A DNA stretch of 64,000 nt, from the NCBI GenBank assembly GCA_024704765.1, contig JAKMXF010000312.1, forward strand, positions 346,181 to 410,180. Reading direction: 5' to 3'. Origin of the DNA: Oopsacas minuta (lineage: Eukaryota; Animalia; Porifera). Below, in pieces: positions 108 through 21,318 of the stretch. Each line of letters starts with the position of its first letter. The stretch's first letter is position 1. The notes under the pieces are model-generated. The model was not told the DNA's origin and ran no database searches. It was given only the letters and a program-made list of their open reading frames with translations. Position numbers and translations under genes: made by a program.

Positions 108-3100
108 TCATACGTTGTTATGAAGAAATCTAAGGATAGTATTACCCATTACATATAGAGTTAGGTAATATTATTTCTACAAGAGCACCAAGGATTTTAC
201 ACCGTCGGCACAGATCAAAAAATATTTTTAACTCACCAACGAAGGAACGAAGTTCATTCTCTGACGACGCAACTGTTTAACTAACTGGAAAATATCAACT
301 TCATTGTTCTGTTGTAAATTCTGTATACTCTTGTACACAGTATAAACAACACCTGACTTTCCTATACCATCAATACAATGCAATACTATTGGCCGATGCT
401 TGATCACTTCAGTTTCGTTCTGCAATATGTTTAGGATATCTATAACCTCATCTGTATTAACTGGTTCATCGTTTTCATCCCATGAAGTTGAAATTATCTG
501 CGTGAAAGTGTGCATTCTATTTTCATACCAGTTTGTTAACTTTATCACATTTCTTATCAAACCGCCAACTTCTTCGGATTCGACTACCTCCGTGCGGAAA
601 GGCATTACATCTATGAACTCTGGCATATTCGGCCAATAAGGCACGCAATTTGACTGTCGATTGACTATATCAGCGTACTCCTTAGGAGTTGTAATCATAA
701 TCACCATTAATGTCTGTGTTTGGTACAGCATTTGTAGGAAATCTAATATCGTGTCCTCTACAGGGTTAATAGTCAGGATATACTTGTAAGAATCCAGATA
801 GGACGCGTTGATGTAATCCACAGGTAAATCTTCTGATGATAATACAACGCGATTATGGTCGCATGGGAGAGCGTTTTTAATTGGATTTTTGGTGTCATTC
901 AGCATGTCCATTCCTACATAACACTCTAATGGAAATCCCTTTTCACTTTGATACTCGAGTTCGTAGTATTGTTCAAATAGGATAGAGACAGTTCCTTCTT
1001 TCTCAGATTCCATAAACCTCTGGAAAGTGCTAGGAAATTCGGAACCAGCTATAACAGTGTTTTGGTATAGTAATTCTAAAATTGATAAGTAGATGAATTT
1101 GTATTGACGGAAAGTTTGCACCATTTGTGGACGATGTTCTCTCATTTCGTGGACAACTCTATAGATGCTAATTGGCTGTTGATTTTGAATTGCTTCCAAC
1201 AGGTTGAAAAGTGTTAGAAAAGTTCCAGTACGGCCAACACCCGCTGAACAATGTACGACAATAGGCTTTTCAGCGTTTAGAATTGAACTCTTTACAATAT
1301 TCACAAATTCTAGGATATCCTTGAAAGTCGTCGGTACATCATGATCAGGCCATGCTGTGAAATGGAATTGCCGAATGTTTCGAATTAGCGTGCCGTCCAT
1401 CACTGTCATTCGTCTAATAACATGAGATGCAAACATATCTTCACCACAGAATACAACTTTATAACGACCGAAAGTTTCAAGATTTTCAGTCGCAAAATAC
1501 TTTTCGCATTTCTGTTTTCCACCTTCGCGCAAATTTGTTACCATCACAATATCATTGACCTCATGTTCCATTACCATTCTCCAAAAATCCTCGACTGTGC
1601 TTTCCTTGGGGCCCTGTGCTGCAATAAATGTGTGTGGCACGTACACACCCGGTATGTATGAAGCATTAATATAGCTTGTAAGAACACTATTGCCCTCTTG
1701 CATTAGGATTACACGGGATTTATCATAGGGCAAAGTATCAATGAATTTATTCTTCGCGCTACTGCCTTCAATTTTGGCTGCTGTCCATGAATACCTTCGC
1801 TGTGTGCCGCCCAAACTTTTGTATTCACTTTCTAGTGCATTCCTTTGGCTCCATACTGTATCCATGTGATGTTTATAGTATTCAAGTTGGATAGGTTCAA
1901 AATACGGATTGTCTTGAGCATTCTCGTTAATTGTTATGTTCTCATATGCACTTGTACTCGATAGAATTTTTGGGACATTTTGGTGTTGCTCATCAATAAG
2001 ATTAGGAGCAAAGTTTGGATTTGTATATTGTGTATTGTGCTCAATCGATTTAGCTTTCTCCATACTCACAATCTCTGGTTCTTCTCCTAGAAGATTCGAT
2101 TTAACAAATTGCCGAGGTTTACGTGTATTCAACCAAATTAAGAGCGTCAATAGAACCATGAGTATACCCAAAGTCAATAAGAGAATTACTACGACAGCAA
2201 CAACTATAAGTGTTGTTGTTGAATTTTGAGTTTCTGGTAGATTTGTTGCTGCAATATACTCGAAGAAATGTATGATTTCTTTGCTACTTGTTTGTATGGT
2301 GAAAGCATAGGATAGTTCAATACGTATGGTGTAATTTTGATTCGACGTTAGCCCAGTTAGATTGTAGGAGAAGGCTTGTGTCATTCCTGCTATAATATCT
2401 GTATTACCAATTCCGTAGTATATGGTGAACATTTCGTTTGAGTCATTTGTCTGTGGAAATGTTAGATCCCAGGTTATTCCGATTGTGGTAGAGTCTAATG
2501 TTTCTGGGTATATGCCCTTTATTGTTTGCTCAAAGGCTCCTAAAAATAGAATTGATGAAATTCGACAGTAAATTACTACTGTGTACCGTACAAAACGGGA
2601 TATCAGGGACGCCGAAAATGCTGTCCCGTTTCCTCGTATCTAGGAATTCATGCAAAATTATCTCATTACGTCTCCAGAAGTTTCAGTTTCCATAGGCCCC
2701 ATTCTCAGAGGTTACATTGTATAATATCTGTGAATGCAGTATGGATTATGTGATTACATTGTTTTGATCTTACCTGTTACTTTGAGTTCAAAATCAGCTG
2801 TTGTATATACTGTACTATTAGATGAACTTCTCTTCACTGCAAATATCCCTGCGTGCTCTACCATTAGAAGCTCTATTGTGTATGGCTTGATTGCTAGTTC
2901 GGTACGTTCTTGGTTATCAAGATCAATTGTCCATAGACAAGTGATTAAACTGCAGTCAAATTGGATGTTAGTTGTCAACACTGGAATCTCAAGTGTTTGT
3001 GCCATTGGGAACATATTGTTGGTTGCATCATCGAATGTCATTGTTGTATCACCATAGGTAATAGTAACAACAACAGAATCTGCAAATATAATAATAATAA

Positions 3101-6100
3101 TAATTTTAGAGTTTTCAAGATTTTGGCATAGATTTTGCCTGGATTTTGTATGAACCCTTCAAGTGTATAGCGTGAACTTCGAAGGCTCATCATTTGGCTA
3201 CACTAATATATAATTACCTCTTATATCCAAGTTTACGCCTCCTAATACAGTAGCAGGGCTCATTCTGTAAAAGCATCTCAGTACAAAATCTCCACTACCT
3301 ACAACACTGAACACTTCATCCAAACTAACAGGATTCCCAAACTCAGGAGAGTATATTCTATCTTCAGATGTGAGTACTCTTTCTGGTGTCCAGCGTATTG
3401 AACTATCTGCAATGGTAGAGTCAATATTTTCATAGTATAACATTGTAGGAGACCCTGCTGTATATCCTATCTCTATTGTGCTATTAAAGTCATCGAGTGT
3501 AACTGAAATATGAAATATAAAAAGCCAATTTTCTAAAGTTTGCATTTTCACTTACTTATGGTAGAAGTAGGGTCTAAAATGAAAATGTTATGAGAAATTG
3601 ATCCATCAATAACGCATGCGTATTGCCCAGGTTCTTCAGCAGAAATTTCGAGTATACTGAATCCTGTTGTTGAGTTAAAATCCGCACTTGATGTTTTACT
3701 GATGACATGATCACTACCTACAATACTATACAACCATTCAATGTTGGAAGTGCTGTTGTCTGTTGCACACACTATTGATACACTGGTTGATGGCTGAATT
3801 GCTGTACCATTGGATAATGGTGTTATCTCGTTTAAGCCTTCAATTCTGCCAATATTTGTGCCTATAACAGGATTATTAACTTGAATTCAGCGTTGCTATA
3901 ATATGAAGAATTTTGGTTTTGACATGAACATTGCAGAAACTATGAACTTAGGGCATGAACCTTTGGCATAGACTTTAAGTTGGCAACACTTAATTTTAAC
4001 TTTTAGCTGTGTAAAGGGCACCTTCTTAAAATGTTATACAAATATATCAACACAAATCATTACAGTATAAATACCTTGTGTGAAAACTGAAATCTTGAGT
4101 ACCACCTCCTCTTGGCTTGATTCCCAAAATTTTACAGAAAATTGAACATCTCCATTATGCTGTAGTGACATTATAGGAATATTCAAATCGGTTCCTATTT
4201 CATATCCTCCTAGAGATTGACTCCAGCTTCCGAACAGAAGATTACTTTGTATTACTACATTTTGTGCGTAAGTAGGTATCTGTATTATGGTATTACCATA
4301 GGGTTGTCCGAAGTATTGTGGGTCAGCTCCATCGTAAAATACAGCAAGATTTGCCTCACCTAAATATTGTAAAAAGTATATAATTATAGTTATTTAAGGC
4401 CTAGTATAGTATACTATTGGTAAGGTAAATTGTCCAGAGACATAATTTTCGGGAAGAAGGCACTCTGAACTTTACTTTGCAATTTTGGGCACAATAAACT
4501 GATTTGTACTTTTTGAGATTTGTCCATGCAAAGTGATTGGACCTTGCTGGCATAAAGTCTTACCCTGGATGTTTAATGTTGCTTGAATTCTGATGTCAGA
4601 CTTAATTGTTACATAACAATATATTTCCATGATACTTGGCAGTTCAATATTCACAAGTGACCTAACTGTAACAGGATTTGGATGGGGGGAACCTCCGATT
4701 AGCCAAGATACATTTCTCAGGTTGATAGTTGTATCCATGGGGTCACAATGTAGTTGTATTCCATCACTGTCTATACCCACTGTATAATTGTAAGTGTTTC
4801 CCCCAGTAACAGCTAAATGTATATGATTAGATATTCCACTTATATACAGTCGAATTCGGCTTTTTACTCGTGCGTTTTGTGGGGTAAAAACTCGATTTAG
4901 ACTGTATAACAATAAACTCTAGAATACTTACCAGTTGTTGCTGTTGGGCTACGAGTAAATACACCCATATAATATGTGACTTGAATACCATCCATTGTTA
5001 TTTCACAATTATAATATCCTTCTAAATCTAATGTAGCTTTGAATTTACCAATACCATACAAAGTTGTAGCAGTAAGGCCTTGCACATTTTTACTAAATGT
5101 TGTTTGATGCCCCCAGTAAACAAGGGAACCCGGTTCAGATGTACAAACTAGCCAAGTGTCAGCGTAGAAAATTGAGTTGATAGGCTGCACTGTATATTGC
5201 CCTGAGGAAGTTTCTATCGCAACAGGACTACCTATAGGAATAGAAAATAACAAACTGTGAAACGCAATAGGAAGTCAAAGATTTATGCAAACCTGTTTGA
5301 GAAATATCTATAGCGAATATTTCCTTCACTTCACCATTCCAAGTTTGATTCGTGTTGAAACTGTATCTTCCAGGTGATTCCAATGTAAATAATTGAATTA
5401 TTGCAGTGTTATTTGGTATAAAGGGGTAAATAGGAATTGTCCATGTACCAGACTCTATATTCGTTATAAGTGTGACGTCAGTTGAATAGAGTGGAATTGT
5501 TATAGAGATTGGATCAGGGCTTACAGTACCGTAATTTGTAGTATCAAATCCAGTGTAACTTAGCATGAGCATAGGATCTATTACAAATGTTCAAATCAAA
5601 AGATAGAATTTTTAGGCATTTAATAACTAACCATATATAGTAATCTGTACTGAAAATGTTGCTACACTTTCCATATAGCAGGTTAAATTCAAACTAGCCG
5701 CTATATTATTGATAACAACAGGATTGTTGTAGGTTGAATTTGTTGTTGTATCTCTCCATGTTATTGTGTTGAGGTTGATTGAGGTATTTTCTTGATCACA
5801 TAATAACTGTATGTCATTTTGGTCAATACCTTTGATATAGTAGTAAGACATCCCAGCAGTTGCAACTAGATAAGTTAGACATTGTATTAGTAATTTTGAA
5901 AATTGAAGCTGCAGAATTATCAAGCAATAGAATGGGAGTATTGTATTGTCAAAATTGAATCTTTTTTCAAATTTTAAGCGACAAAAATGGTGTAAAACTA
6001 TTTATATTAGAAGAATTATATACCCAAAGTGCACATCTAGACCCAAAACTACATCCTTGTACCAATTTTCATTTAAATTGGACAACTAGATTTCCCAAGA

Positions 6101-7103
6101 CAGCGCCTACGGAGATTTTTGGATTATCACTTCTGGTATTAATAACATACCTGTAGTAACCATAGGATTAAATACAGCTACTGTGTAAGTTACATTCCTC
6201 ACTTTACAGGTATAATACCCCTGTTGTGACGTCATTATTTCGATGCTACTTATTCCTGTAGTTGTATTCCATAATGATGTAGTTTCGTTTTCTGTTGCAT
6301 CTTGATTGGGTTGGTATGTCCATTGTATTTGCTGAGAAGTGTCATTTGTAGCGCATACAAGTGTTGTATTAGTGTGGAATATGTTGTTATCAGATAGTAT
6401 AATGTATTCAGCAGATGCTGTTTGTTCAGCTAGTCTTGTTCCTAATGTGGAAATAGTGAATATTTGTAGTAATTAACATACGTGTAGCATTTTAATGGTG
6501 ATTTCTCGACATATATGAATTTCACCTTTATCCATGGTTCAAAAGTTAAAAATGACTTACAGACTAGCTGTGCTAATACAATTGCATTGCCCAATATACG
6601 TACACCAATTATTTGTGTAACTTTAATAGGAATTTCGCGAAATGATCATCCATATAATTCCGTGGATACTCTTATTTGAAAGCTAACTCACCAACAACAG
6701 AGATACTTATCTGTATCGCTAACACATCACTTCCATTCTTAGAAACATAGAACCTGTACAGCCCACCGTGATTAGCTGCGAATACTGGAATTGCAAATGT
6801 ACTATCTGTAATATTGGTATTATCTGGAGCTTGCCATTTCCCTGTGACGTTAGTTTCTAAAGTAACATTAAGTGTTAATACTGTAATATCAGCTGTGTTA
6901 ACTTCAGGCGGGAGAAGAGCATGAGTCTCAATCGTAGTGTGAGATAGAGTAATAACTGGTGACCCTATAAGGAAATAATAGATATTAAATATGTCTATTT
7001 GTAAGTGTTTGCTATAGTTACCTTCTGCAGTTGACTGATGTATTAAAACTGCGAACAAAACAAGCAAATATCCACAAAAATGGTGCATAATCAATGAACG
7101 CAT
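108..7103 (-). CDS. Receptor-type protein tyrosine phosphatase 'RPTP-A': signal peptide, 10 Ig-like exons, FN3, TM, active D1 + D2
   Basis: Hand-spliced exons (descending): 7103-7022 signal peptide MRSLIMHHFCGYLLVLFAVLIHQSTAEG; 6964-6692; 6441-6151; 5865-5632; 5577-5293; 5231-4932; 4812-4564; 4359-4075; 3861-3556; 3502-3218; 3079-2774 (each a multiple of 3, phase 1); 2539-237 (FN3, TM LIVVAVVVILLLTLGILMVLLTLLIWL, D1 with WPDHDVP, HCSAGVGRTG, QTFRQY; D2 HCIDGIGKSG); probable last exon 176-108 with in-frame TAA at 171-173. Confidence 0.88.
2577..2721. mobile_element. MITE family M1 copy (Tc1/mariner-like TA|CAGTGTAACCTCC termini), degenerate, in RPTP-A intron
   Basis: Left end tactgtgtaccgtacaaaacggg, internal cagggacgccgaaaatgct shared with other M1 copies, right end gaggttacattgta. 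Confidence 0.65.
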
Positions 7104-7910
7104 TATATTATTAACTCAATAACAAATGTAATACAGTTTTTATACCTTGCCTAATTCCAATGTAATTTGAGTTCAAGTCATTGTATCTTCTGCATACCAT
7201 ACACCCTTGGTATATGTTGAATGATATCTGGTTTACAGAGGTATATCATATTGCAGTGTTATTTGCTATTGAGTATATTAGAGGGTGGATATGCGTAGTA
7301 TTGTATGTGGATTAGGGTTGAACGGTGGTATTAGTGCTAAGGTTGGAATTCCAAGGGTATTTATTGGTTGCTAATTAGGAAATCAAGCTATTAAATAGGG
7401 TGGCTTGTATTATATGGGAAGTTTTCTGATGTAATTTCTAGCTATTGCGACAATTTTAGATTTTTTCCGATTTTTTCCATAATCTTAACGAGACTTTGAA
7501 CTTGAATTTCTACTCATTTTATCGCCATTAGATTACACCAAAATATAGCCGAATTTTCTCCATAATTTGTAGAGGAAATTTCCCATTAATAATAACAGGC
7601 AATTGTGTAATACATTACTCATATACTGATTTCAAATAAGCTGTGGGAGTTCTAACAGTCTCAACACAATTAATCTCAAATTAAATTCTCCGTTTTATGC
7701 ATACAAATGTATTGGAGAGATTATTAAGTAATTTGACTGAGGTTTGCTGTGCTACCAGTTTATGGAAAAATTAACTTTAGAGATATATTCTTACATTTAT
7801 CTATGTTGTAGGCAGTCAAAGAGTTAAATTACTCAAATTACTATTTAATAATAGAATACTTGTGTATTGGAGAAGTTCTGTTTGGAAAGATATTATTTTA
7901 TGATGAAGGA

Positions 7911-10900
7911 ATGAGAACAGAATATTTATTTATTTTGATAGTATTTGTGCTGCAGATATTGTCAGTTATTGGACAAGGTAATTAATATATGTGAATTTAT
8001 TGGGTATTGCTTATAAGAACACTGGTTATCTAATATAGGAACCATCCTCTTGAAAACGGTTATGAGAACATATATTGCTACTCCTAAGGGTGTTCTTATA
8101 AGCAATAACCATTGTGTATACTATTAGCAGTTAAATCCGTACTCATTTTGCTGAGTACACAAGTATAAATCGAAAATTCCTTATTTATAATATATAGAAG
8201 GGAGGTTATTTAATTATTTTCGTAAGAGTTTTGATGGGATTTATGATTTCTTAATTTTCTAGACACTCAAATAACAATATCAACCACAACCACCCCTTAC
8301 ACAAACTTACCTCCTGAAAGCAACACTGCAGAAATTCTTATACTATCTCTGAATGTTACTTTAGAAGCTAATATAACAGGGATGTGGGAGAGACCTGGCA
8401 AAACATATAGTCACGATAAATCAATCAATTTTGATGTTTTCACTGTCGACTTAGCTGGTTCGTACAAATTTTATGCTGATGGAATCAGGACTGTATCGAT
8501 ACAGATTGACATTTCTGCTACAGGTAAATATTGTATATATTACGTCTGTAGGTAAGCACTTCAGTAAATATTGTGGAATCCGCCTATTAGCAACCGTTTT
8601 CATCGACATGGCCATAAAGTGATGGTTTGTATGGTAATTTGTGTGTATAATAGCCTAATTGTTTAATAATAGAACAGAACTCACAGGAAAAGTATTGGCT
8701 ATACAACTAGATATATCTGTCGATCACGGTTGAAGATTTATGATCGTAATGAAGAGAAACACAAATAAGTTATTACTTCGTTTTCTGTATTTCCGACAAT
8801 TTCGATATTTTCACACCTTGATGACGTCATAAAATCACACATTTTGCAGACTGTATTCGGTTGAACTAATGTATATTGAAAAAAGTTTTGATATACAACA
8901 TTTCCTCCAGGTAGTAACTTTGCTGAAATGACGTCATCTGGAGTATACACAATATTATCTGATAACAATGTGTTCTATAATGACAGAACACTAGTATGTG
9001 CGACTAGTGACACTAGTACAGAGCCAGAATGGAGTCGAAATGGAGCAGTGATCACTGGAACCTGGGATGATGTAACAGGAATAAGTACACTAGACATAAC
9101 TATATCACAACAAGGATATTATACATGTACTCCTGTATCAGGGACAAGTTATACTGTAGCTATATTCAATCCTGATATTACTATAAGTGAGTTGTATTAA
9201 AGATGAATCTTTTTAGCATTTGGAAATTGTCAATGTTGTTCTTACTTTCTTTATAATATACACTTTCTTGTGTTTAGTTGCACAAGGCGGAGTTACTTAC
9301 TATTACACTAAAGATATAGATCCCTCTAATATACAGCTCTTGTGTACTACAACTGATCTTACTAAGGCATTGGAGAGTATAGATTGGACTATTCCTGGGC
9401 AAACTAATAGAAATCCTGTTCTTCTCGAAGAACTCCCAAATTCCATCACTCAATTGAACTGTTCTGCAGGGCTAGTAACTGCCAAACTTAGAATACAAGG
9501 TAAATTGGCATATGTTACTGGTCCTGATTTTCTATATAGCATAAGCGTAAGATCCAATTCACAACTCCTACCCATCCAAAGAGAGGCTATTCATATGTAT
9601 TTATAGATATAGGTAGGCCACTTCCTAGGGGGCCCAAAGCATCATTTCTCCATTTTCTGCCTATTATAGAAAATGCTATACATAGATCACTGACTCAATT
9701 TACCGATACCTACTTATTTCTCTATCCCATTAGGACCGCCTGTAATAACACTATCCACTACGCCAGATATAACATATTCTATGTTACCTACTGCATCAGA
9801 GGCTAATAATGCTGATATCATGGCCTTGTCTAAGAATGTTACGCTGGGAATTAACCTCGTAGGAGAATGGAAATTTCCTAACGGTTCTAGGAGCCAATCC
9901 AACCCTTTAGTATTAGAATTATTTACAGCTAATCTAGCTGGAGTATATGAATTCTATATAACAGATTGGAATGGTGTAGATATACTAGCAATACAGATAA
10001 CATTATCTGCTATGCGTGAGTGTGTTCTATGTGATATTTAACTGTAGAAGGATCCAATGTATTTATATGTTTATCTTGTATAGCTTATTTTGCGGAGTTG
10101 TCACAGGGAGAATACACACTATTATCTGGTAACAATGTGTTCTATCATGACACGACGCTAGTATGTGGGAGTAGTGACACTAGTACAAAGCCAGAATGGC
10201 GTCGAGATAGAGAAGTGATCACTGGAATCTGGGATCCTATAACGGGAATAAGTACACTAGACATTACTACATCACAACAAGGATATTATACATGTACTCC
10301 TGCATCAGGGACAAGTTATACTGTAGCTATATTCAATCCTGATATTACTATAAGTGAGTTGTAATTCATATTATATATTATAAAGTGAATTTTGTAGATA
10401 GTGTTGTTGTTACCATTTTTATCATGTATCTGTTCTAATGTTTAGTTGCAAAAGACGAAGGAATTTACTTTTATACTCAAGATGTAGATCCGATAGATAT
10501 ACAGCTATTGTGTACTACAACTGACTTCTCTATAGCACTGAACAATATAAAATGGATGAATGGTGGAACAATGTATAATAATCCTGCTATTCTTAATGAT
10601 ATCCAAAATACATTCACTACATTGACTTGCAATACAGGAAATATACAAGTAAACCTGATGTTACAAGGTAACTACAATTATACACAAGTCTGTCTATCAT
10701 TATTACTTATATGAGTTATATCGTAATTTACTACTTAAATATGATACTTTCCATTAGGACCTCCAATTCTCACGGTAAGTTATCCAAGTTTGACTACTCC
10801 CTACTCAACATCTGTCAGCAGCACATATAGCATCACAATCTTAACACAGGACGTTACTATAACTAGTAACCTGATGGGAACATGGCAATCAGTTGTCAGT

Positions 10901-13900
10901 TCTCCTGCAAGTAACATAGCTATCCAAGTTGGAACATTTACTAAAGACAAGGCTGGTTTATACAGTGTATATGTTACACCTTGGGATGGAACATCTGATA
11001 TACCCGCTATACAATTGGATATTTCCGCAATAGGTAGAGTTGATATGTTTGGAATTATTCTCAAATCTGTGCACTTTTCCATACAAATGCCTCCCTAATT
11101 AACGTAGTATACTGTGTGTTCATATTTTCTTCTCTTTAGGTAATAACTTCGCTGAAATGACGTCATCTGGAGTATACAACTTCCTTACTGGGTTTGAAGT
11201 GTTCTATGTTGATACTACATTAATTTGTGCTACAAGTGATTCAACTGAACCTCAATGGAGTTATATAGGAATTCCAAGTGGTAACAATACACCATCAGGC
11301 GTATGGAATTCTGATACAGGGCTAAGTACATTGAATATACAAACAACAGCACAAGGATATTATAAATGTAATAAAGGAGCACTCTTCTCGGCATCTATAT
11401 TTGATCCTAGTATTACAACTGGTAAGATAGAAATAGAAATGTGTATTTCTATAATGAATATTTGAACATATTCATGTGTATTTAGTTGTGAAGCAAGGAG
11501 AAGTATACACATACTCATATACTAAGGGAGTAGATTCTTCAGATATACAACTGTTTTGTACAACTAGTATTAACAGAGCATTCCCTAACATGAAATGGGG
11601 TTCATTTGGGAATCCTGTAATTCTCAATAATGTACCAAACCAAGAGTTTGATACATTTGATTGTACATTTGGACCCATTGGCATACTAAGTATCGATCTA
11701 TTAGTACAAGGTGAGTACATTTATACGTAATTTCCTTCCAATACACTTTGAATGCATTATTCCAAAATTTATTTCAATAGGACCACCTGTAATAACACTA
11801 TCCACTGCACCAGATACAACATATTCTATGTTACCTACTGCATCAGATAACAATAGGGCAAATATACCAGTGTTATCTGAGAATGTTATGCTGCAAACTA
11901 ATCTCTTAGGAAGATGGCTAAAACCTGATGGATCTTCTACTGATGGAAACTTTATAGAATTCATACTATTCACTGTAGATCTTGTTGGTATTTATCAGTT
12001 TAATGTAACAAATTGGGAAAACCAGGAAGAAAAGGCAATACTGATCAATATTTCTGCAGTTGGTAAGATATATTTATATACAGTTGAACTCGGAAAACAA
12101 AATTAGCATATACTAACCGATGGATGTCTTATCCGAATATTATTCCTATACAATTCATACAATATTTGATAATCCGCTTTGGAGAAAAGTACGTACAAAT
12201 CGAGTTCTAGTGTATTTCCTTATATTATAGGTACCAACATTGGAATGGATTCAAATTCCACTATTACAACAATTTATATGGTATATTCTAGGTACTGCAT
12301 TTATAACCATGACACAAAACGACTCTCAGATTATTTATCAAGAACTGAATAATAATTCAATAATAAATATGACAGGGAATGCATCCTTAGCTTGTGCTAC
12401 GTCACATATACCAGCGGAGGAAAATGATATAGAATGGTTCTATCAAAAAACAAGCATAGCAGATCCGGGAGCAATAAGAGGGGATTATAATCTAACAATT
12501 GGGCTGAATGTATTGGTTACTGACCAACCTGGATTTTACAGATGCGAAGTGTCAAACGAAAATCGTGAAAAGTTCATATATTTTGTAGGAATAGTGCCCA
12601 CTTCTGATGATATTCAATCAAGTGAGTGATTTACAAGCATTGATTGCATTTACAAATTGTGAAAATTAGGTCTGCACAGGATGTAATTTCAGTGTTTAAG
12701 CTACTATCATTGTATTTATCCTCATTTAGTTGGCAGAGATGATCTAGAGACTGCTAAAACAATTGATTATATCTTAGGAGAACCTCTAATGTTGTATTAT
12801 TATGATGTAAATATACCTATAACCGCAATTCGCTGGGGTGTTGAAGTTGGGTCAACTGAATTAGAAGAATTTCTGAATCCAGTAGATGTCAATGAGGTGT
12901 TTGCAAAGTTTGGAAGCGGTGCGTACAAGTTCCGTTGTTTCTATAGACAGAGTCCTATTACTAATGTTGGAAATATATCACTAAATATGAAAGGTAAAAT
13001 TCAATGCATTTTCTATTACACGTGTCATAACACACTAATTTTCAAATATTTCACTAGATAATGCTTCTTTGATGGTTGAGAGTGACGCAATATGACAATA
13101 TTCAATGATAGTGGAAATAAAATTTTCCGATCCGGAAAGAATAGACATTGAGATTGTCTCTAAGAATGTGCTAATTTCCTGCAGTTTAAGTCCGTGTGGG
13201 ACAAATTGAAAAAGATGGAAATCTTTTAACTACTGAAGAGATAAATATAGTTTCATTGAGGATAGAGAATCAAGGATTATACTCATTGAGGAGAAATACT
13301 AGCGAAGGAGTTGAATATACTACTGCTGCCTTCAATCTAATTGTTACAGGTATTTGCCAATTGTTGCAAATTATCTATTGAATTAATGCGTTTGAAACTG
13401 CCTCAACAAAACATTATTGCGAATTTTAATAATTCATTGCCTAAAATTTTGTGAATCTAACGTCGATATAACCATCCTATTTGCAAGTATACATAATATT
13501 GTGACACCTTATCATATTGTAGTCATCTATGAATGTTCTATAAGTATAACTAATCTAATATATTATTTAGGCTATATAGAACAGAACATAATAAATCTGA
13601 CCCCAAGGTATATAAATGATACTTCTATCCAAATATCATGGCAATTACTAATATCCTTACCTGACAACGCAGAGGAAACATTCACCGTTACATATCAAAC
13701 ACTAAATGGCGTAATACAAACAGCTGGAATAACAACAGAACTAAACTATAACTTAACTGATCTCATCCCCGGTCAAACCTATACAATTTGGGTTGAATTG
13801 TCGTATACATACACTTTTATGTCGCCAAAACTTTCAATTGAAGTTACCATCCCCGCACTGGATTTCCCACTGATATATGTCGTAATTGTTGTCATTTTAA

Positions 13901-16199
13901 TCGTGATAATTGTATTACTGGCTATTACAGCTGTATTAATCATCCTCTTAATTTGGAAACTTCGGAAGAGGAAAGTGAAAAAGTTTGAAGTACTTGAGAC
14001 AGAGGAAATTCCACCTGAACCGAGTACTAAGCCAAGCAAAGACTTTGGCTACTCCCCAGTGCCAATTGATAATCTTGCGTACAATCCAGAATTGACCGAG
14101 TCAATGGGTGTAAAGTCAAAGTTTAAGGAATCAGCAAGGAATAGTGGGAATTATCAAAATTTGAAGGAAGTTATGGACCCTAGGATGGAGCCTATAGCTT
14201 TACATTTGTTTAAAAAGGCAATTGATATGCTTTGGAAAGATGAAACTACACTTGAAAATGAATACAAGAGTTTAGGTGGTGAAACACTACTTTACGAATG
14301 TGGGTATGCTCAATTAGATCAAAACCGAATCAAGAATAAATATAAATTCATTTATCCATATGATAAATCACGTGTTGTGCTGAAGAAACTTGGGAAAGCA
14401 ATGCACACAGATTATATCAATGCAAGCAATATACCAGGAGTATATGTTAAAGAGAATTTTATAGCGGCACAAGGCCCGAAGGAAAATACTATTAAGGACT
14501 TTTGGAGAATGGTCTTTGAGCTGAAAATTGTGAATATTGTTATGGTTACTAATTGTGTTGAAGGTGGTAAGCAGAAGTGCGAAGAATATTTCCCAACAAA
14601 AGAAGGACAAATTAGTGAATTTCCTCCTTTCAAAGTTCGTATTACAAATGCGGTACAGTCCAGAGGTCATATCACAAGGATAATTAGTATTGAAAGGGGA
14701 AATGAAAAGTTTCAAGTCAAACACTTCCATTTCACAGCCTGGCCAGACCATGATGTACCATCTCTACATCACGAATTGCTACAGTTCATTGGCTATGTAC
14801 ATGAGAATATTACTCAAAGCGACGCGCCAATACTTGTACACTGTTCAGCTGGTGTGGGTCGTACAGGGACGTTTATTACTCTATTCAATCTGAGGGCTAA
14901 TATATTGAAACAACAGCCTATTAGTGTTTACCATTTAGTGCACGAAATGAGGGAACATCGTCCTCACATGGTGCAAACCTTTCGGCAATATAAATTCATT
15001 TATCTTGCTGTACTTGAATTGTTACAGGAAAAGACTGCGGTATCTGCCGAGGAATTTCTGAGTACTTATCAGAATTATATGGAATCTGCGCGGATAGAAG
15101 AATCCGAATTTGCAAAACAGTTTTCGGAGCTTAATTATCAATGCGATAAGTCTTTTGTATATTCCTCAGATAAGGGCGAAGAGAACGCCGATAAAAACCC
15201 CGTGAAAGATATCCTACCGTACGACATTAACCGCGTTATGATCTATTCTCCATTTTTCACCTGCAACTATATAAATGCTACCAATCATAACGATTTTTTC
15301 ATAACCACTCAACATCCCTGTGAAAATACTCTACGGGACTTCATGCAAATGATATATGAGACTAATGCTGGGCTTGTGGTCATGCTTACAACATCAAAAG
15401 AGAAGAGTAAGATATTAGGGAATTTATCAGAACGTAAGGCTTATTGGCCACATAAGGATGATACCTTGGAAGTACCACCCTTCCAAGTTCAAGTAGTGAA
15501 TGCTGAGAAGACAACAGCAATGATAAAACAGAAAATATCACTGAAGAATGTAAAGGAGAACTCAGAACATGAATTCCTACAAGTAATTTCTGCAACTTGG
15601 AATGAGAAAGGTGAACCTATCGATTATCAATGCATTATTAATGTAGTTCGCTTTATCACAGTTCAAAGACAAAAATATCCACATTCGCCGATTATAATAC
15701 ACTGTGTGGATAGCATTGGGAAAACTGGTGTTGTGTTAACTGTATATGAATGTATTAAAGAGATGCAAGAGACTGGAGAAATTGATATTTTCCATACAGT
15801 TAAGCGACTGAGAAGAGAGAGAATGAAATGTATACCACATTTGGTAAGTTGACTTTCTCATAGAATCGAATTTATTACTGTGCCGTGGATGGCTTTATAT
15901 GTTACCATATACTTACAGTGGATTCCGGTTATAAGAACACCAGATATAAGAACATACCGGTTATTGGAAGTAAGAACACACATTGCTACTCCCAAGGAGG
16001 TTCTTATAACCTGTATTCACTCTCCCGTTAACACCTTTAGAGATTAAAACACCGAATTCGGCGTATATACTCGTAGTAACCTCTCTAGTTGTGCAACTGA
16101 CAACATAAATTTTTACATGTACATTTTCACACCTTCTCTATCTTTTAGTCTCAATTCCAAGCATGTTTTACGCTAATGAAGCAATACCTCGATTATTAA
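7911..16199 (+). CDS. Receptor-type protein tyrosine phosphatase 'RPTP-B': signal peptide, 13 Ig-like exons (one decayed), FN3, TM, active D1 + D2
   Basis: Exons 7911-7977 (MRTEYLFILIVFVLQILSVIGQG), 8263-8523, 8911-9186, 9278-9499, 9734-10015, 10084-10353, 10446-10667, 10758-11033, 11140-11421, 11486-11710, 11781-12062, 12292-12621, 12730-12993, [13058-13349 frameshifted], 13571-15843, 16149-16199 (SQFQACFTLMKQYLDY*). D1 KNKY, WPDHDVP, HCSAGVGRTG; D2 HCVDSIGKTG. Confidence 0.9.
8005..8108. mobile_element. MITE family M4 remnant (GCTTATAAGAAC...GTTCTTATAAGC)
   Basis: Inverted termini gcttataagaac / gttcttataagc and internal ttgctactcctaagggtgttc shared with 15914 and 50222 copies. Confidence 0.65.
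15914..16022. mobile_element. MITE family M4 copy in last intron of RPTP-B
   Basis: tacagtggattccggttataagaac ... gttcttataacctgtattcac; TA|CAGTG terminus. Confidence 0.75.
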
Positions 16200-16484: not shown

Positions 16485-18582
16485 ATGTGTGTTAGAAATT
16501 CGATATTTATTTCATTTTTACTGTTCTTGTTGATTGTTATTGGACAAGGTAAGTTGTATTCCTTAAAATGTAATCCAGTTTTACAGCCAGTATTTGTAGC
16601 CATACGAATTCAATTGAATATTTATCTCTCTCTTCGAACATTGGCTATTGACATTACGCGTTTAAGATACAGTGTATGCCGGTTTTAAGCACACACTTGG
16701 GATTAGCGATACATGTACTTATAACCGGCATAAATATAAGGGAATATATGAGAACTGTTTTCCAGAGGATTGTTCTTATAACCGACATACAATGCATCTA
16801 TTATAGGTAGTTATATTCAAGAGATCGAGATTATAAGCATTATAGCCCTCAATGAAAATACAGTATTAATATCATGGGATCTTAAAGTCCCACTCTTACA
16901 GAATTCAACTGAAGTTTTCCACATACACTACGGAAGGTATAATACAAATACTTATGCTGGACACACGAATAATCAAAGCTACATACTCCGTGACCTCACA
17001 GCTGGGATATCCTACAGAATATACATAGCTATGACGTATGTATTCTCTAATATAACATACAAAACTGACACATACCAATTCAAGATTGAGAAAATTCCTG
17101 CTACAGAGATGAATATACCCAGTATTGCTGCTATTTCTATTGTCGTATCCTTGACTATATTATCTATTGGGGTTTTAGTGATAGTATTGGCGATATGTGG
17201 GCTGAAACGTGTTGGAATTACAGGGAAATTTGTTCGAGAACGGCTGCAATTGAATGGCAAAACAAACAGTAATATATGTATGATTACATCATCTGAATGT
17301 AATAGTGGGAATATTACATTGAATGATACAGCTGAAACTCGTAAGAATGCGATTTCTATCGAAGAAACTGTGATAGAACAAGGAATTGATATTGATTCGA
17401 TATATTTCGCGAATATCAGTCAGAACGATTGTAATGTTAGCGAAATAACTAACGTAATTGAAACGGAAAGTATATCTGATATTCCAGACGTTTTAAATAC
17501 TGAAAATGCAGACCAAAGAGTTGAATATACTCCCGAACAGCTCAGTGAAAATCTTTCTGATAAAACATACACAATTCCACCAACATTAAGCAAAGATTTG
17601 AATGAGACATATGAAATTACATACAAAGATGTTGAAAATATTGATCAACAAAATACAGAAATTGTTTTCAATATTGAGCTCGAGTTTGAAGCATTAAACG
17701 CTGAAACAAGTGAGCAAAACTGTGAATTTGATGTGAATAATATTACGCTTGAATCGCCAAATTTTGAAGGTTACACACTAAATGCAAGTTACCTTTATAA
17801 TGCAAATATTATTGCGACAATACACCCAACGCGTAGGAGGGATTTCCTACAACTTGTGTACCAAAGTAAATGTAGTTTAATTGTAATGCTTACGAGTAGG
17901 CTAGAGCAGCAAAGTATTATAGCTAGAACATCAGAGTATGTACGATATTGGCCAGTTGATGAATACACAAATGAACAGGAAGATACGCTAATTGAGCAGG
18001 AGATATCTTTACAGCATAGTGTCGAAAACAATAGTATATCATTCAAACATATAATATTTACTGGGTGGGATGATAACGGTGATATTGAAGACATATCGAA
18101 TGTTATTAAGCTGCTGCGGATAATACAAACACATAAAGAAATGAACATGAATACTCGAGTAATAATACATTGTAATGATGGCGTAACGAAGACTGGGATA
18201 TTAATGACTTGCTATACTGCATTACAGGATATGGAGGATAGGAATTGCTATAATATTGAAGATATTGTGAGAGATCTAAGACAGCAGAGAACAAACATGT
18301 TGCCAACCCTTGTAAGTTATTTAATTGTGCGATATATTCTCATTTTTGCATACAGTGAAACCTCAATACGAACACAGTTAATTGGAATTTCCGTATAAGA
18401 CGTTTAAATGTTCACCAATGGTTATTGAGATTACACCGGTTAATACGAACTCAGGATAAAGCGTACACATTTTGACCGCCTCTTGGTGTTCGTATTCACT
18501 GCATTTACTAAATTTATATTTCTAGACATCTTACAGAGCTTGTTATCGTATCATGGAAGAATTCTCATCACTACAGCAATGA
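16485..18582 (+). CDS. Truncated RPTP paralogue 'RPTP-C': signal peptide, single FN3, TM, acidic linker, degenerate D2-like domain only
   Basis: Exons 16485-16548 (MCVRNSIFISFLLFLLIVIGQG, same ttattggacaag|gt junction as RPTP-B), 16807-18311 (FN3 ISWDLKV...LRDLTAGISYRIYI; TM; NASYL, DFLQLVY, HCNDGVTKTG), 18526-18582 (TSYRACYRIMEEFSSLQQ*). Last intron at the same position as in A and B. Confidence 0.85.
16668..16796. mobile_element. MITE family M4 copy in RPTP-C intron 1
   Basis: tacagtgtatgccggttttaag ... gttcttataaccgacatacaatgca; internal segment matches 50700-50760. Confidence 0.7.
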
Positions 18583-19425: not shown

Positions 19426-19528
19426 TTTTGTACACTTTCAATAGATATAATTCTATGCATTAAATGGCGTTAGTAAGTAAGTTATGACGTAATATATATT
19501 ATTATATTTCTTAAATATTAGCTATATT

Positions 19529-21054
19529 ATGTCGGATACAGCAGAACCAATTCCCAAACCTATTCCTTCACCTCTTTCATCTCCAGACAGTGATACAGAG
19601 CTCCCGGTAGAGATGTCTCCTCCTCCTCCTACTGAATATTCTACTGACCCTATATGGTCTGACGTTATACCGATACCACAACATGAAGGACCATTTCCGG
19701 TTGTCAGGATTGCATACACGAAGGTAATAATAATTTCTCCTAGTTATGAATTCAATGGTAATCTGACTTAATATATTATTCTGTATAGGAATTCAAAGAA
19801 GTACACGATTACCTCCGTGCTATGCTTAAAACCAATGAACAGAGCGATAGAGCTCTATCACTCACTGAACATGCTGTAACACTAAACCCAGCTAATTACA
19901 CTACATGGCAATATAGGAGAGTGTTATTGAAGGCTATGGGATGTGATTTGGAGAAGGAATTGGATTTTATTGCTAGTGTTATTGGGAAACACCCTAAGAA
20001 CTATCAGGTGATTTATTTGTTTGTTTGTTTTCCAGTTTGTTTATTTCATTGGTTGCTTGTTTGCTACAGGTATGGTACCATAGACAGAAGCTAACTGAAT
20101 GGATTGGATCTCCAGGAAAAGAATTCGAATTCACTGCTGATTGTCTAGAAGATGATACTAAGAACTACCATGTATGGCAGTACAGACAATGGCTATTAGA
20201 GAAATTCCCTAGTTACTACAAGGCTGAATTGGAATTTGTTGATACTCTGATTAAAAATGACGTCAGGAATAATTCTGCTTGGAATCAGAGATATTTTGTT
20301 CTAACTAAAATGAGTGAATTTACAGTAGAACTAGTCAGGAAAGAGGTATGCTATTATGACGGAAATAGGTTATTAGTTATGTGACCATGGATGGTGGATT
20401 TATTTCATCTGCTTGGACGTTGTTCTACGTCATTTTGAGGAACTCCTAGCTTGATTGGGCGGGGAAATTGTACAGTCAACTCCCGTTATGTCAAACATAG
20501 ATATACCGAAGTCTTATATTGTACAAATATGGTTCCAAACCGTCAAAGTAGCATATATTATATCGGTTATATCAAAGCAATTATTGAGGTCCCTTGAGCT
20601 TCGATATAACAGGAGCTAACTGTATATAACATATATCCACCATCCATGGTTAATATCCAATAATCTTTTAGCCGGGAGTTTTAATATTTGAATTATACAG
20701 ATTGAGTATACAAAACTTTGTATCCGGTTATCACTACATAATGAGAGTCCTTGGAATTATATGAGAGGTATCCTGAATTGCCAAGATTTGAGTTTATATC
20801 TTGAAGTTAAGATCTGGATTCTGCAAACAATCGCGAAAAGAAAACCGTCAATATACGCGTATAGTATTCTAATTGATATATGTGAAATGGAGATTGAAGA
20901 GGGAGGTCCTGAAATGTGTCAAAATGCCTTGACAGAAGCTCTGAGTTACTGCCAAATCCTGGGAGAAGATATGGATGTTATACGTAAGAATTATTGGGCT
21001 TATACTGCAGACAGATTGAAAAATTTATTCACAGTTATCCATGGTGTAAAGTGA
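19529..21054 (+). CDS. FNTA: Protein farnesyltransferase/geranylgeranyltransferase-I alpha subunit
   Basis: join(19529-19723,19789-20007,20070-20345,20701-21054); PFTA repeats NPANYTTWQYRR, KNYQVWYHR, KNYHVWQYRQW, DVRNNSAWNQRYF, NESPWNYMRG. Confidence 0.95.
20367..20665. mobile_element. Foldback family M3 (arms ...ttaaccatggatggtggattt / aaatccaccatccatggttaa...) with nested M2 MITE (20471-20624)
   Basis: Left arm gtgaccatggatggtggattt (~20381), right arm atccaccatccatggttaatatccaataa (~20635); inner element tacagtcaactcccgtt...aacaggagctaactgta. Confidence 0.75.
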
Positions 21055-21318
21055 GTGTATATTATTATATAAAATTATTATATTTATTTGTTGGAAGATT
21101 TTAGTAATCTGTAAGCATGCAAATGCAAGTGTTACCCTCTGTATGATTATATCAGTGTTGCCAGATAATGGACAAAGTTCATAGATTTTTGCTTTGGAAT
21201 CAACTTCTGAACTTTGAACATTTGACTAATGGCATGAATTTGTGGGTACTTGGCAACACTGTTATATATATTGATGTGTTTTACCATAGTATGCTGTATA
21301 ACGTTAGATTTTATGTAA

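What the first reader, a model, noticed from the sequence alone, without database searches (positions are those of the whole stretch)
2774..13349. Head-to-head RPTP pair built from a cassette array of symmetric phase-1 Ig-like exons, (A-B-C)n-A-D-E-F
Every ectodomain intron I could place is phase 1, and every ectodomain exon except one is a multiple of 3 and encodes one domain. Three module types recur in fixed order: A (Cys-free), B (C-W-YxC Ig) and C (short, 74-83 aa, QLxC..W..NPV..C). RPTP-A has (ABC)2-A-D-E-F and RPTP-B has (ABC)3-A-D-E-F; they share an ~800 bp divergent spacer (7104-7910). Any exon can be skipped or duplicated without frameshift, which allows combinatorial isoforms or copy-number alleles. 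Paralogous modules are strongly diverged in sequence while D1 is well conserved between the genes. I infer a diversifying recognition receptor family (allorecognition- or immune-like) wired to a phosphatase. I do not recognise this architecture among the vertebrate RPTP subtypes.
Basis: partly seen in the sequence, partly recalled or inferred. Interest (0 to 1): 0.75.

Follow-up and report, generated by a model that had tools for sequence, protein, structure and literature searches.

The report
Glass-sponge phosphatase receptors, Ig-like cassettes
Two neighbouring receptor tyrosine-phosphatase genes of the glass sponge Oopsacas minuta have outer parts built from a repeated three-exon set of antibody-like domains; they belong to a large receptor family that the papers searched here do not describe, and its role in recognition is plausible but untested.

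Summary
Window 228-16196 carries two head-to-head type-I receptor tyrosine phosphatase genes, with start codons 807 bp apart. All 25 introns I placed are GT-AG and phase 1. Each ectodomain exon is one module, in the order (A-B-C)2-A-D-E-F for gene A and (A-B-C)3-A-D-E-F for gene B. GenBank's protein KAI6650360.1 matches my gene B model exactly for 13 exons.

The genome is the glass sponge Oopsacas minuta, not human.

- **Folds:** A folds as an Ig-like sandwich. B and D have the Cys-Trp-Cys Ig pattern. C is probably a small Ig-like domain.
- **D-E-F:** These look like a diverged B-C-A unit, so the ectodomain reads A-(B-C-A)n.
- **Family size:** The genome holds at least 104 A, 134 B and 84 C exons. 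Arrays of 1-6 units end in D1-D2, D2-only or phosphatase-free tails.
- **F in gene B:** This exon is a decayed half-module.

The "diversifying recognition receptor" reading is only partly supported. Family-wide dN/dS is 0.4-0.5. However, gene B's tip module A1 shows 18 nonsynonymous and 0 synonymous changes against its two partial copies. Module number varies between paralogues, and exon-limited gene conversion occurs. Isoforms and polymorphism were not testable.

The scan had already noted this family on other DNA of the same genome (s1-211788, s1-270249). It is a new variant of a known kind.

The parts
7022..7103 (-). Gene A exon 1: start codon and signal peptide (MRSLIMHHFCGYLLVLFAVLIHQSTAE); ends in phase 1
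   Evidence: donor G|GTAACT; 57-nt intron at 6965-7021
6692..6964 (-). Gene A module A1 (Cys-free Ig-like), 273 nt
   Evidence: A profile hit
6151..6441 (-). Gene A module B1 (Cys-Trp-YxC Ig), 291 nt
5632..5865 (-). Gene A module C1 (short, QLxC..W..NPV..C), 234 nt
5293..5577 (-). Gene A module A2, 285 nt
4932..5231 (-). Gene A module B2, 300 nt
4564..4812 (-). Gene A module C2, 249 nt
4075..4359 (-). Gene A module A3, 285 nt
3556..3861 (-). Gene A module D (B-like Ig), 306 nt
   Evidence: B profile hits it (C312:349737-349958)
3218..3502 (-). Gene A module E (C-like), 285 nt
2774..3079 (-). Gene A module F (A-like, full length), 306 nt
228..2539 (-). Gene A last large exon: FN3-like domain, transmembrane helix, active D1 (VHCSAGVGRTG, WPDHD) and inactive D2 (HCIDGIGKSG, read off the translation)
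   Evidence: acceptor ctatttttag|ga at 2540, phase 1
7104..7910 (.). 807-bp divergent spacer between the two start codons; no notable repeats; the last 265 bp (7646-7910) are copied with gene B's 5' end on C92 and C345
7911..7977 (+). Gene B exon 1: signal peptide (MRTEYLFILIVFVLQILSVIGQ)
8263..8523 (+). Gene B module A1, the membrane-distal tip; excess of nonsynonymous change against its two partial copies
8911..9186 (+). Gene B module B1; about 230 nt homogenised with B2
9278..9499 (+). Gene B module C1
   Evidence: structure model
9734..10015 (+). Gene B module A2 (the sequence that was folded)
10084..10353 (+). Gene B module B2
10446..10667 (+). Gene B module C2
10758..11033 (+). Gene B module A3
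11140..11421 (+). Gene B module B3
11486..11710 (+). Gene B module C3
11781..12062 (+). Gene B module A4
12292..12621 (+). Gene B module D (Ig_3, below threshold)
12730..12993 (+). Gene B module E (C-like)
13114..13200 (+). Decayed N-terminal half of gene B's F module: readable only in another frame, with a stop upstream; not in the coding model
13191..13349 (+). Gene B F remnant, the C-terminal half-module. My acceptor is at 13190; GenBank's model starts the exon at 13251. Both are phase 1-1
13571..15843 (+). Gene B large exon: FN3 (Pfam E 4e-7), transmembrane helix, active D1, inactive D2 (IHCVDSIGKTG)
16149..16196 (+). Gene B small terminal coding exon, according to GenBank's model

Best explanation
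**What it is.** These are two paralogous type-I receptor protein-tyrosine phosphatases of the glass sponge Oopsacas minuta. They sit head to head inside a cluster of at least five related receptor genes.

**Shown.**
- Each protein has a signal peptide, a long ectodomain of 10 (gene A) or 13 (gene B) Ig-like modules, one FN3, one transmembrane helix, a catalytically competent D1 and a D2 that lacks the catalytic arginine and the WPD aspartate.
- Each module is one phase 1-1 exon.
- The ectodomain is one tip module A followed by repeats of a three-exon unit B-C-A. The membrane-proximal unit D-E-F is an old, diverged copy of that unit.
- The unit is shared by a family of hundreds of exons in this genome. 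Family members carry different heads (module A or C-type lectins) and different tails (D1-D2, D2 only, or no phosphatase).

**Inferred from paralogue comparisons.** The family evolves by birth and death. Events include duplication and deletion of units through recombination between homologous exons, exon-sized gene conversion, truncated copies, and decay of single cassettes. The symmetric phases tolerate that decay.

**Inferred, untested.** The array is a long arm that presents a fast-evolving tip (A1) to a ligand on another cell or microbe, and it also sets the size of the ectodomain. Ligand binding, or size-dependent exclusion from close contacts, would change where D1 meets its phosphotyrosine substrates, as proposed for CD45 and LAR-type receptors. 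D2 would serve a regulatory role.
For: **Genes and domains**
- Pfam Y_phosphatase E about 1e-115 with two stretches per gene, and fn3 E 4e-7.
- The closest solved structures are the tandem domains of PTP-alpha, PTP-epsilon, PTP-sigma and LAR, E 1e-101 to 1e-106.
- D1 has VHCSAGVGRTG and WPDHD. D2 has lysine in place of the catalytic arginine, and WDEND or WNEKG in place of WPD.
- N-glycosylation sequons run at 1.4-2.3 per 100 aa in the modules against 0.6-0.8 in the cytoplasmic part.

**Exon model**
- From. It is identical to GenBank KAI6650360.1 for 13 exons. That annotation used RNA-seq hints (PMC10280926).

**Module folds**
- A: AlphaFold pLDDT 85.5. Foldseek returns NCAM Ig1, MDGA1, AMIGO and Izumo Ig domains. 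The profile against PDB hits the Hoc Ig domains at E 1.6e-6. In the 1.84-billion-protein library its C-terminal half matches hemicentin-like and other Ig-repeat proteins.
- B and D: Ig_2 and Ig_3 at E 1e-4, below Pfam's cut-off.
- C: pLDDT 80.9. All 50 best structural neighbours are Ig-like domains, Z up to 5.9.
- E resembles C and F resembles A.

**Family**
- At least 134 B, 84 C and 104 A exons, and 123 PTP-domain matches in the 61-Mb genome.
- Arrays of (B-C-A)1-4 with E-F or D-E-F and a PTP tail in at least 10 genes on C312, C345 and C111, two of them with D1-D2.
- Lectin-headed, PTP-less proteins with 3-6 units.

**Dynamics**
- The C92 copy of gene B lacks B1 to A3.
- The B-C unit duplication includes the intron.
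- B1 and B2 exons are 87% identical while the intron is 60% identical and dS is 0.11, which indicates gene conversion.
- A1 shows 18 nonsynonymous and 0 synonymous changes.
Against: - There is no expression, isoform, polymorphism or ligand data.
- Family-wide dN/dS is below 1 (0.41-0.52).
- The A1 signal comes from one exon among about 220 pairwise comparisons. It rests on two truncated copies. Part of it lies in a cluster next to a 3-nt indel that could be a single complex mutation.
- Gene B carries a broken F cassette, so it could be on the way to becoming a pseudogene.
- The Ig assignment of module C rests on modest structural scores.
- Modules A, B and C are not detectably homologous to one another by profile comparison.
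- D1 activity is inferred from motifs only.
Confidence: 0.72

Rival explanations
1. This is a constitutive adhesion or stalk receptor without diversification. The (B-C-A)n array would be a structural spacer, as in long Ig stalks. The receptors would mediate ordinary homophilic or matrix adhesion, as PTP-mu or LAR do, and the differences between paralogues would reflect old subfunctionalisation.
For: - The same B-C-A array serves as a stalk under C-type lectin heads in proteins without a phosphatase.
- Family-wide dN/dS is 0.4-0.5, which is purifying selection.
- Core residues of each module are strongly conserved.
Against: - The tip module A1 of gene B shows an excess of nonsynonymous change.
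- Truncated copies, D2-only members and a decayed cassette point to fast turnover.
- Distal modules have higher dN/dS (0.41-0.52) than the membrane-proximal F (0.22) and FN3 (0.16).
Confidence: 0.3
2. The locus works as a combinatorial isoform generator. Because every cassette is phase 1-1, regulated skipping of cassettes would yield many ectodomain isoforms from each gene, in the manner of CD45 exons 4-6 or Dscam-type diversity.
For: - All 25 introns are phase 1, so any skip keeps the reading frame.
- Gene B's damaged F exon could be skipped without a frameshift.
- GenBank's model and mine use different phase-compatible acceptors for F.
Against: - No transcript data were available.
- Symmetric phase 1-1 exons are generic to metazoan extracellular modular genes, most of which are spliced constitutively (PMC8001218).
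- The single GenBank model includes all 13 upstream exons.
Confidence: 0.12
3. Gene B, or the pair, is a decaying member of a birth-and-death family and no longer makes a functional receptor.
For: - The N-terminal half of F carries a frameshift and a stop.
- Truncated copies of gene B's 5' end exist on C92 and C345.
- dN/dS is about 1 between gene B and the C92 copy over 342 codons.
Against: - Thirteen ectodomain exons and an open frame of about 760 codons covering FN3, the transmembrane helix, D1 and D2 are intact, with all catalytic motifs present.
- All splice sites are canonical.
- A ratio near 1 is expected if only the truncated C92 copy is neutral.
- The A1 pattern (exon changing faster than its introns, with no synonymous change) is not neutral decay.
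Confidence: 0.1

Closest known systems
Classical tandem-domain receptor PTPs with Ig/FN3 ectodomains (LAR, PTP-sigma and PTP-delta, type R2a; catalytic domains also close to PTP-alpha and PTP-epsilon, type R4)
   Same: Type-I topology. Ig-like modules plus FN3 outside the cell. An active D1 followed by an inactive or regulatory D2. The best sequence matches in PDB are these proteins.
   Different: Here there are 10-13 Ig-like modules of three recurring subtypes and a single FN3, not 3 Ig plus 4-8 FN3. The modules fall below Pfam Ig thresholds. There is no MAM, carbonic-anhydrase or mucin domain. The family is expanded and clustered in one sponge lineage.
CEACAM/PSG family (N-(A-B)n arrays of alternating IgC2 subtypes)
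   Same: Alternating Ig subtypes in a fixed order, one domain per phase-1 exon. The number of repeat units differs between paralogues. The family is clustered and turns over quickly. These points about CEACAM come from my own knowledge. The only tool link is weak: CEACAM1 is among the weak PDB hits of the B and A profiles.
   Different: The unit here has three modules rather than two, there is no demonstrable homology, and the tail is a phosphatase rather than ITIM/ITAM or GPI.
CD45 (PTPRC)
   Same: A receptor PTP with a fast-evolving ectodomain of variable size, in-frame cassette exons, and an active D1 with an inactive D2. It offers the size-dependent segregation model that I invoke. These points about CD45 come from my own knowledge.
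   Different: The variable part of CD45 is mucin-like and its fixed part is cysteine-rich plus FN3. CD45 scores lower than the alpha, epsilon, sigma and LAR proteins here (E 8e-84).
Sponge aggregation factor genes (Amphimedon AqAFs)
   Same: A clustered sponge gene family with repeated three-exon domain units and an extreme phase-1 bias (154 of 155 introns). It has been proposed as an allorecognition locus shaped by exon shuffling (PMC5400394).
   Different: Aggregation factors are built from Calx-beta, Wreath and VWA/VWD domains, are secreted proteoglycan cores, and were not found in hexactinellids (PMC5400394). The present family is Ig-like and membrane-bound with phosphatase tails.
Class 1-1 exon-shuffling modules (Patthy)
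   Same: Every module is flanked by phase-1 introns, and the signal-peptide exon also ends in phase 1. This is the general rule for metazoan extracellular modular proteins (PMC8001218).
   Different: Nothing differs in principle. This property on its own is ordinary.

Membership tests
Classical receptor-type protein tyrosine phosphatase (tandem D1-D2) | PTP catalytic domain above Pfam threshold, present twice | tested here: met
   PF00102 E 2e-115 and 4e-115, two stretches each, cut-off 20.9 bits
Classical receptor-type protein tyrosine phosphatase (tandem D1-D2) | D1 active-site motif HC(X5)R(S/T), WPD loop and Q loop | tested here: met
   VHCSAGVGRTG and WPDHD in both genes. QTFRQYKF is seen in both translations. 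D2 lacks the arginine and the WPD aspartate.
Classical receptor-type protein tyrosine phosphatase (tandem D1-D2) | Signal peptide, ectodomain and a single transmembrane helix | tested here: met
   Hydrophobic N-terminal exons and one run of about 28 hydrophobic residues before D1, read directly from the translations. No predictor was run.
Classical receptor-type protein tyrosine phosphatase (tandem D1-D2) | Phosphatase activity | not testable with these tools
   Needs an enzyme assay
R2a (LAR-type) RPTP | Three N-terminal Ig domains followed by 4-8 FN3 domains | tested here: not met
   10 or 13 Ig-like modules and one FN3
R2b (PTP-mu-type) RPTP | N-terminal MAM domain | tested here: not met
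   No MAM hit in any exon at E up to 1
Immunoglobulin superfamily domain: module B/D | Cys...Trp...YxC core and a Pfam Ig model above the gathering score | tested here: inconclusive
   The core pattern is invariant. Ig_2 and Ig_3 score 20.8-22.7 bits against cut-offs of 27-30. PDB profile hits to CEACAM1, MDGA1 and NCAM are at E 0.06-0.4.
Immunoglobulin superfamily domain: module A | Ig-like beta-sandwich fold | tested here: met
   pLDDT 85.5, 8 strands. Foldseek hits Ig domains with TM 0.5-0.63. The Hoc Ig domains score E 1.6e-6. The canonical disulfide is absent because the module has no cysteine.
Immunoglobulin superfamily domain: module C | Ig-like beta-sandwich fold | tested here: inconclusive
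   pLDDT 80.9. Foldseek gives no hit at E 0.001 or better. All 50 top VIA-align rows are Ig-like, but Z is only 4.4-5.9. There are no PDB or Pfam sequence hits.
Class 1-1 exon-shuffling module genes | Domains bounded by introns of the same phase (1-1) | tested here: met
   25 of 25 introns are phase 1. Thirteen boundaries are confirmed by KAI6650360.1.
Sponge aggregation factor family | Calx-beta and Wreath domains | tested here: not met
   No such Pfam hits. The family is reported absent from hexactinellids (PMC5400394).
Polymorphic allorecognition or immune receptor locus | High allelic diversity, positive selection at binding sites, and linkage to fusion, rejection or infection phenotypes | tested here: inconclusive
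   Only paralogue comparisons were possible. There is one positive signal (A1) against family-wide dN/dS of 0.4-0.5. No population or phenotype data.

The most novel reading that the evidence does not exclude
The A-(B-C-A)n receptor family could be the self/non-self or microbe recognition system of glass sponges. Phosphatase-tailed members such as these two genes would act as signalling receptors, and D2-only or tail-less members as decoys. Glass sponges lack the demosponge aggregation-factor genes yet still discriminate self from non-self. Specificity would lie in the fast-evolving tip module, and unit number would be an additional variable.
Probability: 0.15. Interest if true: 0.8.

Novelty: new variant of a known kind. 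Interest (0 to 1): 0.5.

Why it matters
Receptor tyrosine phosphatases with Ig/FN3 ectodomains, and phase 1-1 domain exons, are textbook features of animals. In that respect the locus is ordinary.

What is not in the literature I could search is the lineage-specific superfamily it belongs to. That family is a three-module Ig-like super-repeat used as a variable-length arm. It carries lectin or Ig-like heads and phosphatase, pseudophosphatase or short tails, and it amounts to hundreds of exons in a 61-Mb genome of about 16,400 genes. The genome paper does not mention phosphatases.

The molecules behind tissue recognition in hexactinellids are unknown (PMC5400394). This family is a concrete candidate that can be tested.

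The locus also gives a clean natural example of cassette evolution. It shows unit loss or gain, exon-sized gene conversion, positive selection confined to one exon, and a decayed cassette that the symmetric phases tolerate.

Tried and rejected
- **Homology among A, B and C.** Profile-profile comparison found none (probabilities 0.2-1.9%). I therefore do not claim that the three modules derive from one another.
- **Gene conversion as the cause of A1 divergence.** No sampled A module carries the window's state at more than 10 of 22 diagnostic sites. A diverged donor would also have brought synonymous changes, and there are none. Rejected, although donors I did not sample cannot be excluded.
- **Purifying selection as the cause of B1/B2 similarity.** dS in the exon is 0.11 while the adjacent intron is 40% diverged. 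Gene conversion fits better.
- **Special structure in the 807-bp spacer.** Only short repeats at chance level.
- **Full genome-wide map of arrays.** Array strings cover only C312, C345, C321, C111 and C92.
- **First dN/dS script.** It timed out and I rewrote it.
- **Joined exons.** Every query was a single exon by reference. The only full-length sequences used were database records (P0129 and others).
- **Origin of the contig.** It is a glass-sponge contig, not human.

Full report
**Origin of the window**

The window is G000:C312:346181-410180 of a 61.46-Mb assembly in 365 contigs. That matches the published Oopsacas minuta genome: 365 scaffolds, about 61 Mb, 36% G+C (PMC10280926). GenBank proteins of O. 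minuta lie on contigs of exactly the lengths seen here: KAI6650360.1 on 410,180 bp and KAI6647141.1 on 264,024 bp. It is a glass-sponge contig, not human.

**The observation**

Two long open frames bracket the region. One is at 228-2432 on the minus strand (734 aa) and the other at 13417-15852 on the plus strand (811 aa). Each carries two Y_phosphatase domains at E about 1e-115, and gene B also has an fn3 hit.

Between them the coding sequence is broken into open segments of about 90 aa. I enumerated GT...AG pairs that keep the reading frame and used the paralogous exons as a guide. This gave 11 introns for gene A and 14 for gene B.
- All are phase 1.
- All ectodomain exons are multiples of three.
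- Introns are 53-387 nt long.

GenBank's KAI6650360.1 (P0129, 1893 aa) contains my gene B exon translations E1, A1, B1, C1, A2, B2, C2, A3, B3, C3, A4, D and E in order. Each is separated by exactly one residue, the split codon. That annotation came from BRAKER/Augustus with RNA-seq hints.

The two models differ in three places:
- F starts at 13251 in GenBank's model and 13191 in mine.
- GenBank places the start of the large exon at 13571. I had listed that acceptor as my second choice and now adopt it.
- GenBank adds a small terminal exon at 16149-16196.

I found nothing remarkable in it.

**The modules**

Alignments confirm three recurring types in fixed order.
- **A** has no cysteine and an invariant N..G.W...F...G.Y core.
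- **B** has the C...W...GYYxC pattern.
- **C** is 73-82 aa with Y.Y..D...L.C...W...NP...C.

*Module A.* From a 27-sequence alignment, A folds with pLDDT 85.5 into an eight-strand sandwich. Its Foldseek neighbours are Ig domains of NCAM, MDGA1, AMIGO and Izumo, and Ig-like decorations of phages. Its profile hits the Ig domains of T4 Hoc at E 1.6e-6 in PDB. In the 1.84-billion-protein library its C-terminal half matches hemicentin-like and other Ig-repeat proteins. Full-length matches are confined to O. minuta records and unnamed ENA open frames.

*Modules B and D.* These reach Ig_2 and Ig_3 only below Pfam's cut-offs.

*Module C.* C folds with pLDDT 80.9. Foldseek gives nothing significant. All fifty best VIA-align neighbours are Ig-like domains, at Z 4.4-5.9. 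I call C probably Ig-like.

*Relations between modules.* A, B and C are not detectably related to one another. E is C-like (hhalign 84%), F is A-like (94%), and the B profile hits D. The ectodomain is therefore better written A-(B-C-A)n, with D-E-F as the oldest, membrane-proximal unit.

**One exception**

Every other family member has an F module of about 95 aa. Gene B's F exon encodes only the last 33-53 residues. The missing half is still recognisable at about 13114-13200, but in another frame and behind a stop codon.

Because the exon is phase 1-1, either use of an internal acceptor or complete skipping would keep the frame. Which of these happens needs cDNA.

**The cytoplasmic part**

D1 has VHCSAGVGRTG, WPDHD and the Q loop. 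D2 has lysine in place of the catalytic arginine and lacks the WPD aspartate. The nearest solved structures are the tandem domains of PTP-alpha, PTP-epsilon, PTP-sigma and LAR.

Identity between gene A and gene B is as follows:

| Region | Identity |
|---|---|
| D1 | 55% |
| D2 | 40% |
| FN3 | 39% |
| Juxtamembrane | 26% |
| Ectodomain modules | 18-51% |

**Family context**

Six-frame profile searches of the whole genome find at least 104 A, 134 B and 84 C exons, and 123 PTP-domain matches, 23 of them at 200 bits or more.

In the 162 kb fetched for the map, plus the window and contig C92, local HMM mapping gives these arrays:
- On C312, C345 and C111, (B-C-A)2-4 followed by E-F or D-E-F and a PTP tail: D2 only in most (one more array ends directly in D2), D1-D2 in two, both (B-C-A)2.
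- One (B-C-A)3-E-F array with no PTP match in the stretch fetched.
- Two giant PTP-less arrays.

The window's neighbourhood reads, from the left:
- minus strand: (BCA)4-D2;
- minus strand: (BCA)2-FN3-D1-D2;
- minus strand: gene A;
- plus strand: gene B;
- plus strand: an FN3-TM-D2-only gene.

GenBank proteins named after their C-type lectin heads ("macrophage mannose receptor", "IgE Fc receptor", "ladderlectin") carry 3-6 B-C-A units and an FN3 but no phosphatase. The genome paper does not mention phosphatases. My literature searches found no description of this family.

**Dynamics**

Contig C92 (18.4-21 kb) holds a truncated copy of gene B at 85-91% nucleotide identity. It comprises 265 bp of promoter, exon 1, A1 and intron 2, which is then joined to B3-C3-A4 and a D-like exon. 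It therefore lacks B1 to A3 and has no transmembrane or PTP part. C345:225206-226328 holds a second fragment, comprising promoter, exon 1, A1 and part of intron 2, at 93.5% identity.

Within gene B, the B1-C1 and B2-C2 pairs are duplicates that include the intron. However, the B exons are 87% identical (dS 0.11) while that intron is 60% identical and the C exons 66%. This indicates a gene-conversion tract limited to the B exon.

dN/dS for paralogue pairs with dS below 1:

| Module | Median dN/dS |
|---|---|
| A | 0.52 |
| B | 0.47 |
| C | 0.41 |
| E | 0.40 |
| D2 | 0.29 |
| F | 0.22 |
| FN3 | 0.16 |

This is a distal-to-proximal gradient of constraint, but there is no general positive selection.

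The exception is gene B's A1. Against both partial copies its dN/dS is 2.7-2.8. On the branch that separates gene B from the copies:
- The exon has 23 changed sites in 261 (8.8%), against 8 in 508 (1.6%) in the flanking introns (p = 5e-6).
- There are 18 nonsynonymous and 0 synonymous changes (p = 0.009).
- Other A modules more often share the copies' state than the window's (9.9 against 5.7 of 22 sites). The changes therefore probably arose in gene B, and no sampled module could be a conversion donor.

Caveats: this is one exon picked from about 220 comparisons, and several of the changes cluster beside a 3-nt indel.

**Interpretation**

The anatomy and the mode of evolution are well supported. 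The function is inferred. I read the array as a long arm of 10-13 Ig-like domains. It presents a fast-changing tip and sets the size of the ectodomain, and it is coupled to an active D1.

A role in self/non-self or microbe recognition is attractive. Hexactinellids lack aggregation-factor genes yet discriminate self from non-self (PMC5400394). I put that role at about 15%.

The phase 1-1 layout is the general rule for metazoan extracellular modules (PMC8001218) and should not be read as an adaptation.

**Limits**

**Earlier notes of this scan**

Notes on other pieces of the same genome (s1-211788, s1-270249) describe the same cassette family. Notes s1-290559, s1-290567 and s1-290575 describe the neighbouring genes. 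All of these agree with what I found.

Noticed in passing
window 17031-18398 (+), with upstream exons from about 16485: A third receptor gene directly downstream of gene B. It has an FN3-like piece, a transmembrane helix and a single D2-type PTP domain (IIHCNDGVTKTG, no catalytic arginine). It is a D2-only pseudophosphatase member of the cluster.
   Followed up: partly
G000:C312:323777-346000 (just left of the window; loci L045-L047): Two more family genes lie on the minus strand: (B-C-A)4 ending in a D2-only tail, and (B-C-A)2-FN3-D1-D2. That makes five related receptor genes in about 45 kb.
   Followed up: partly
G000:C92:18388-21058 (locus L042 4388-7058): A truncated copy of gene B (SP-A1-B3-C3-A4-D'), 85-91% identical, with no transmembrane or PTP part. 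It is followed by an unrelated open frame. The C3-A4 intron is open in frame. A 71-nt remnant of a D2 3' end lies just upstream on the opposite strand.
   Followed up: partly
G000:C345:225206-226328 (locus L056): A fragment copy of gene B's promoter, exon 1, A1 and part of intron 2 at 93.5% identity. A D2 remnant lies on the opposite strand nearby (225099-225215).
   Followed up: partly
G000:C16:3.5-19 kb versus C312:115-125 kb; C11:493-505 kb versus C277:408-420 kb: Pairs of lectin-headed giant array genes whose GenBank proteins cluster at 90% identity or more yet differ greatly in length (2284 against 2747 aa; 1037 against 2521 aa) and in module strings. This could reflect recent copy-number change, uncollapsed haplotypes or annotation differences.
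   Followed up: partly
window 19500-21100 (+): Split open frames with TPR-like repeats of the 'NYHVWQYRQWLL' type. They look like a protein prenyltransferase alpha-subunit gene and are unrelated to the finding.
   Followed up: no
window 6965-7021 (-): Gene A's first intron is 57 nt, a multiple of three and free of stops. Retaining it would insert 19 residues in frame between the signal peptide and A1.
   Followed up: no
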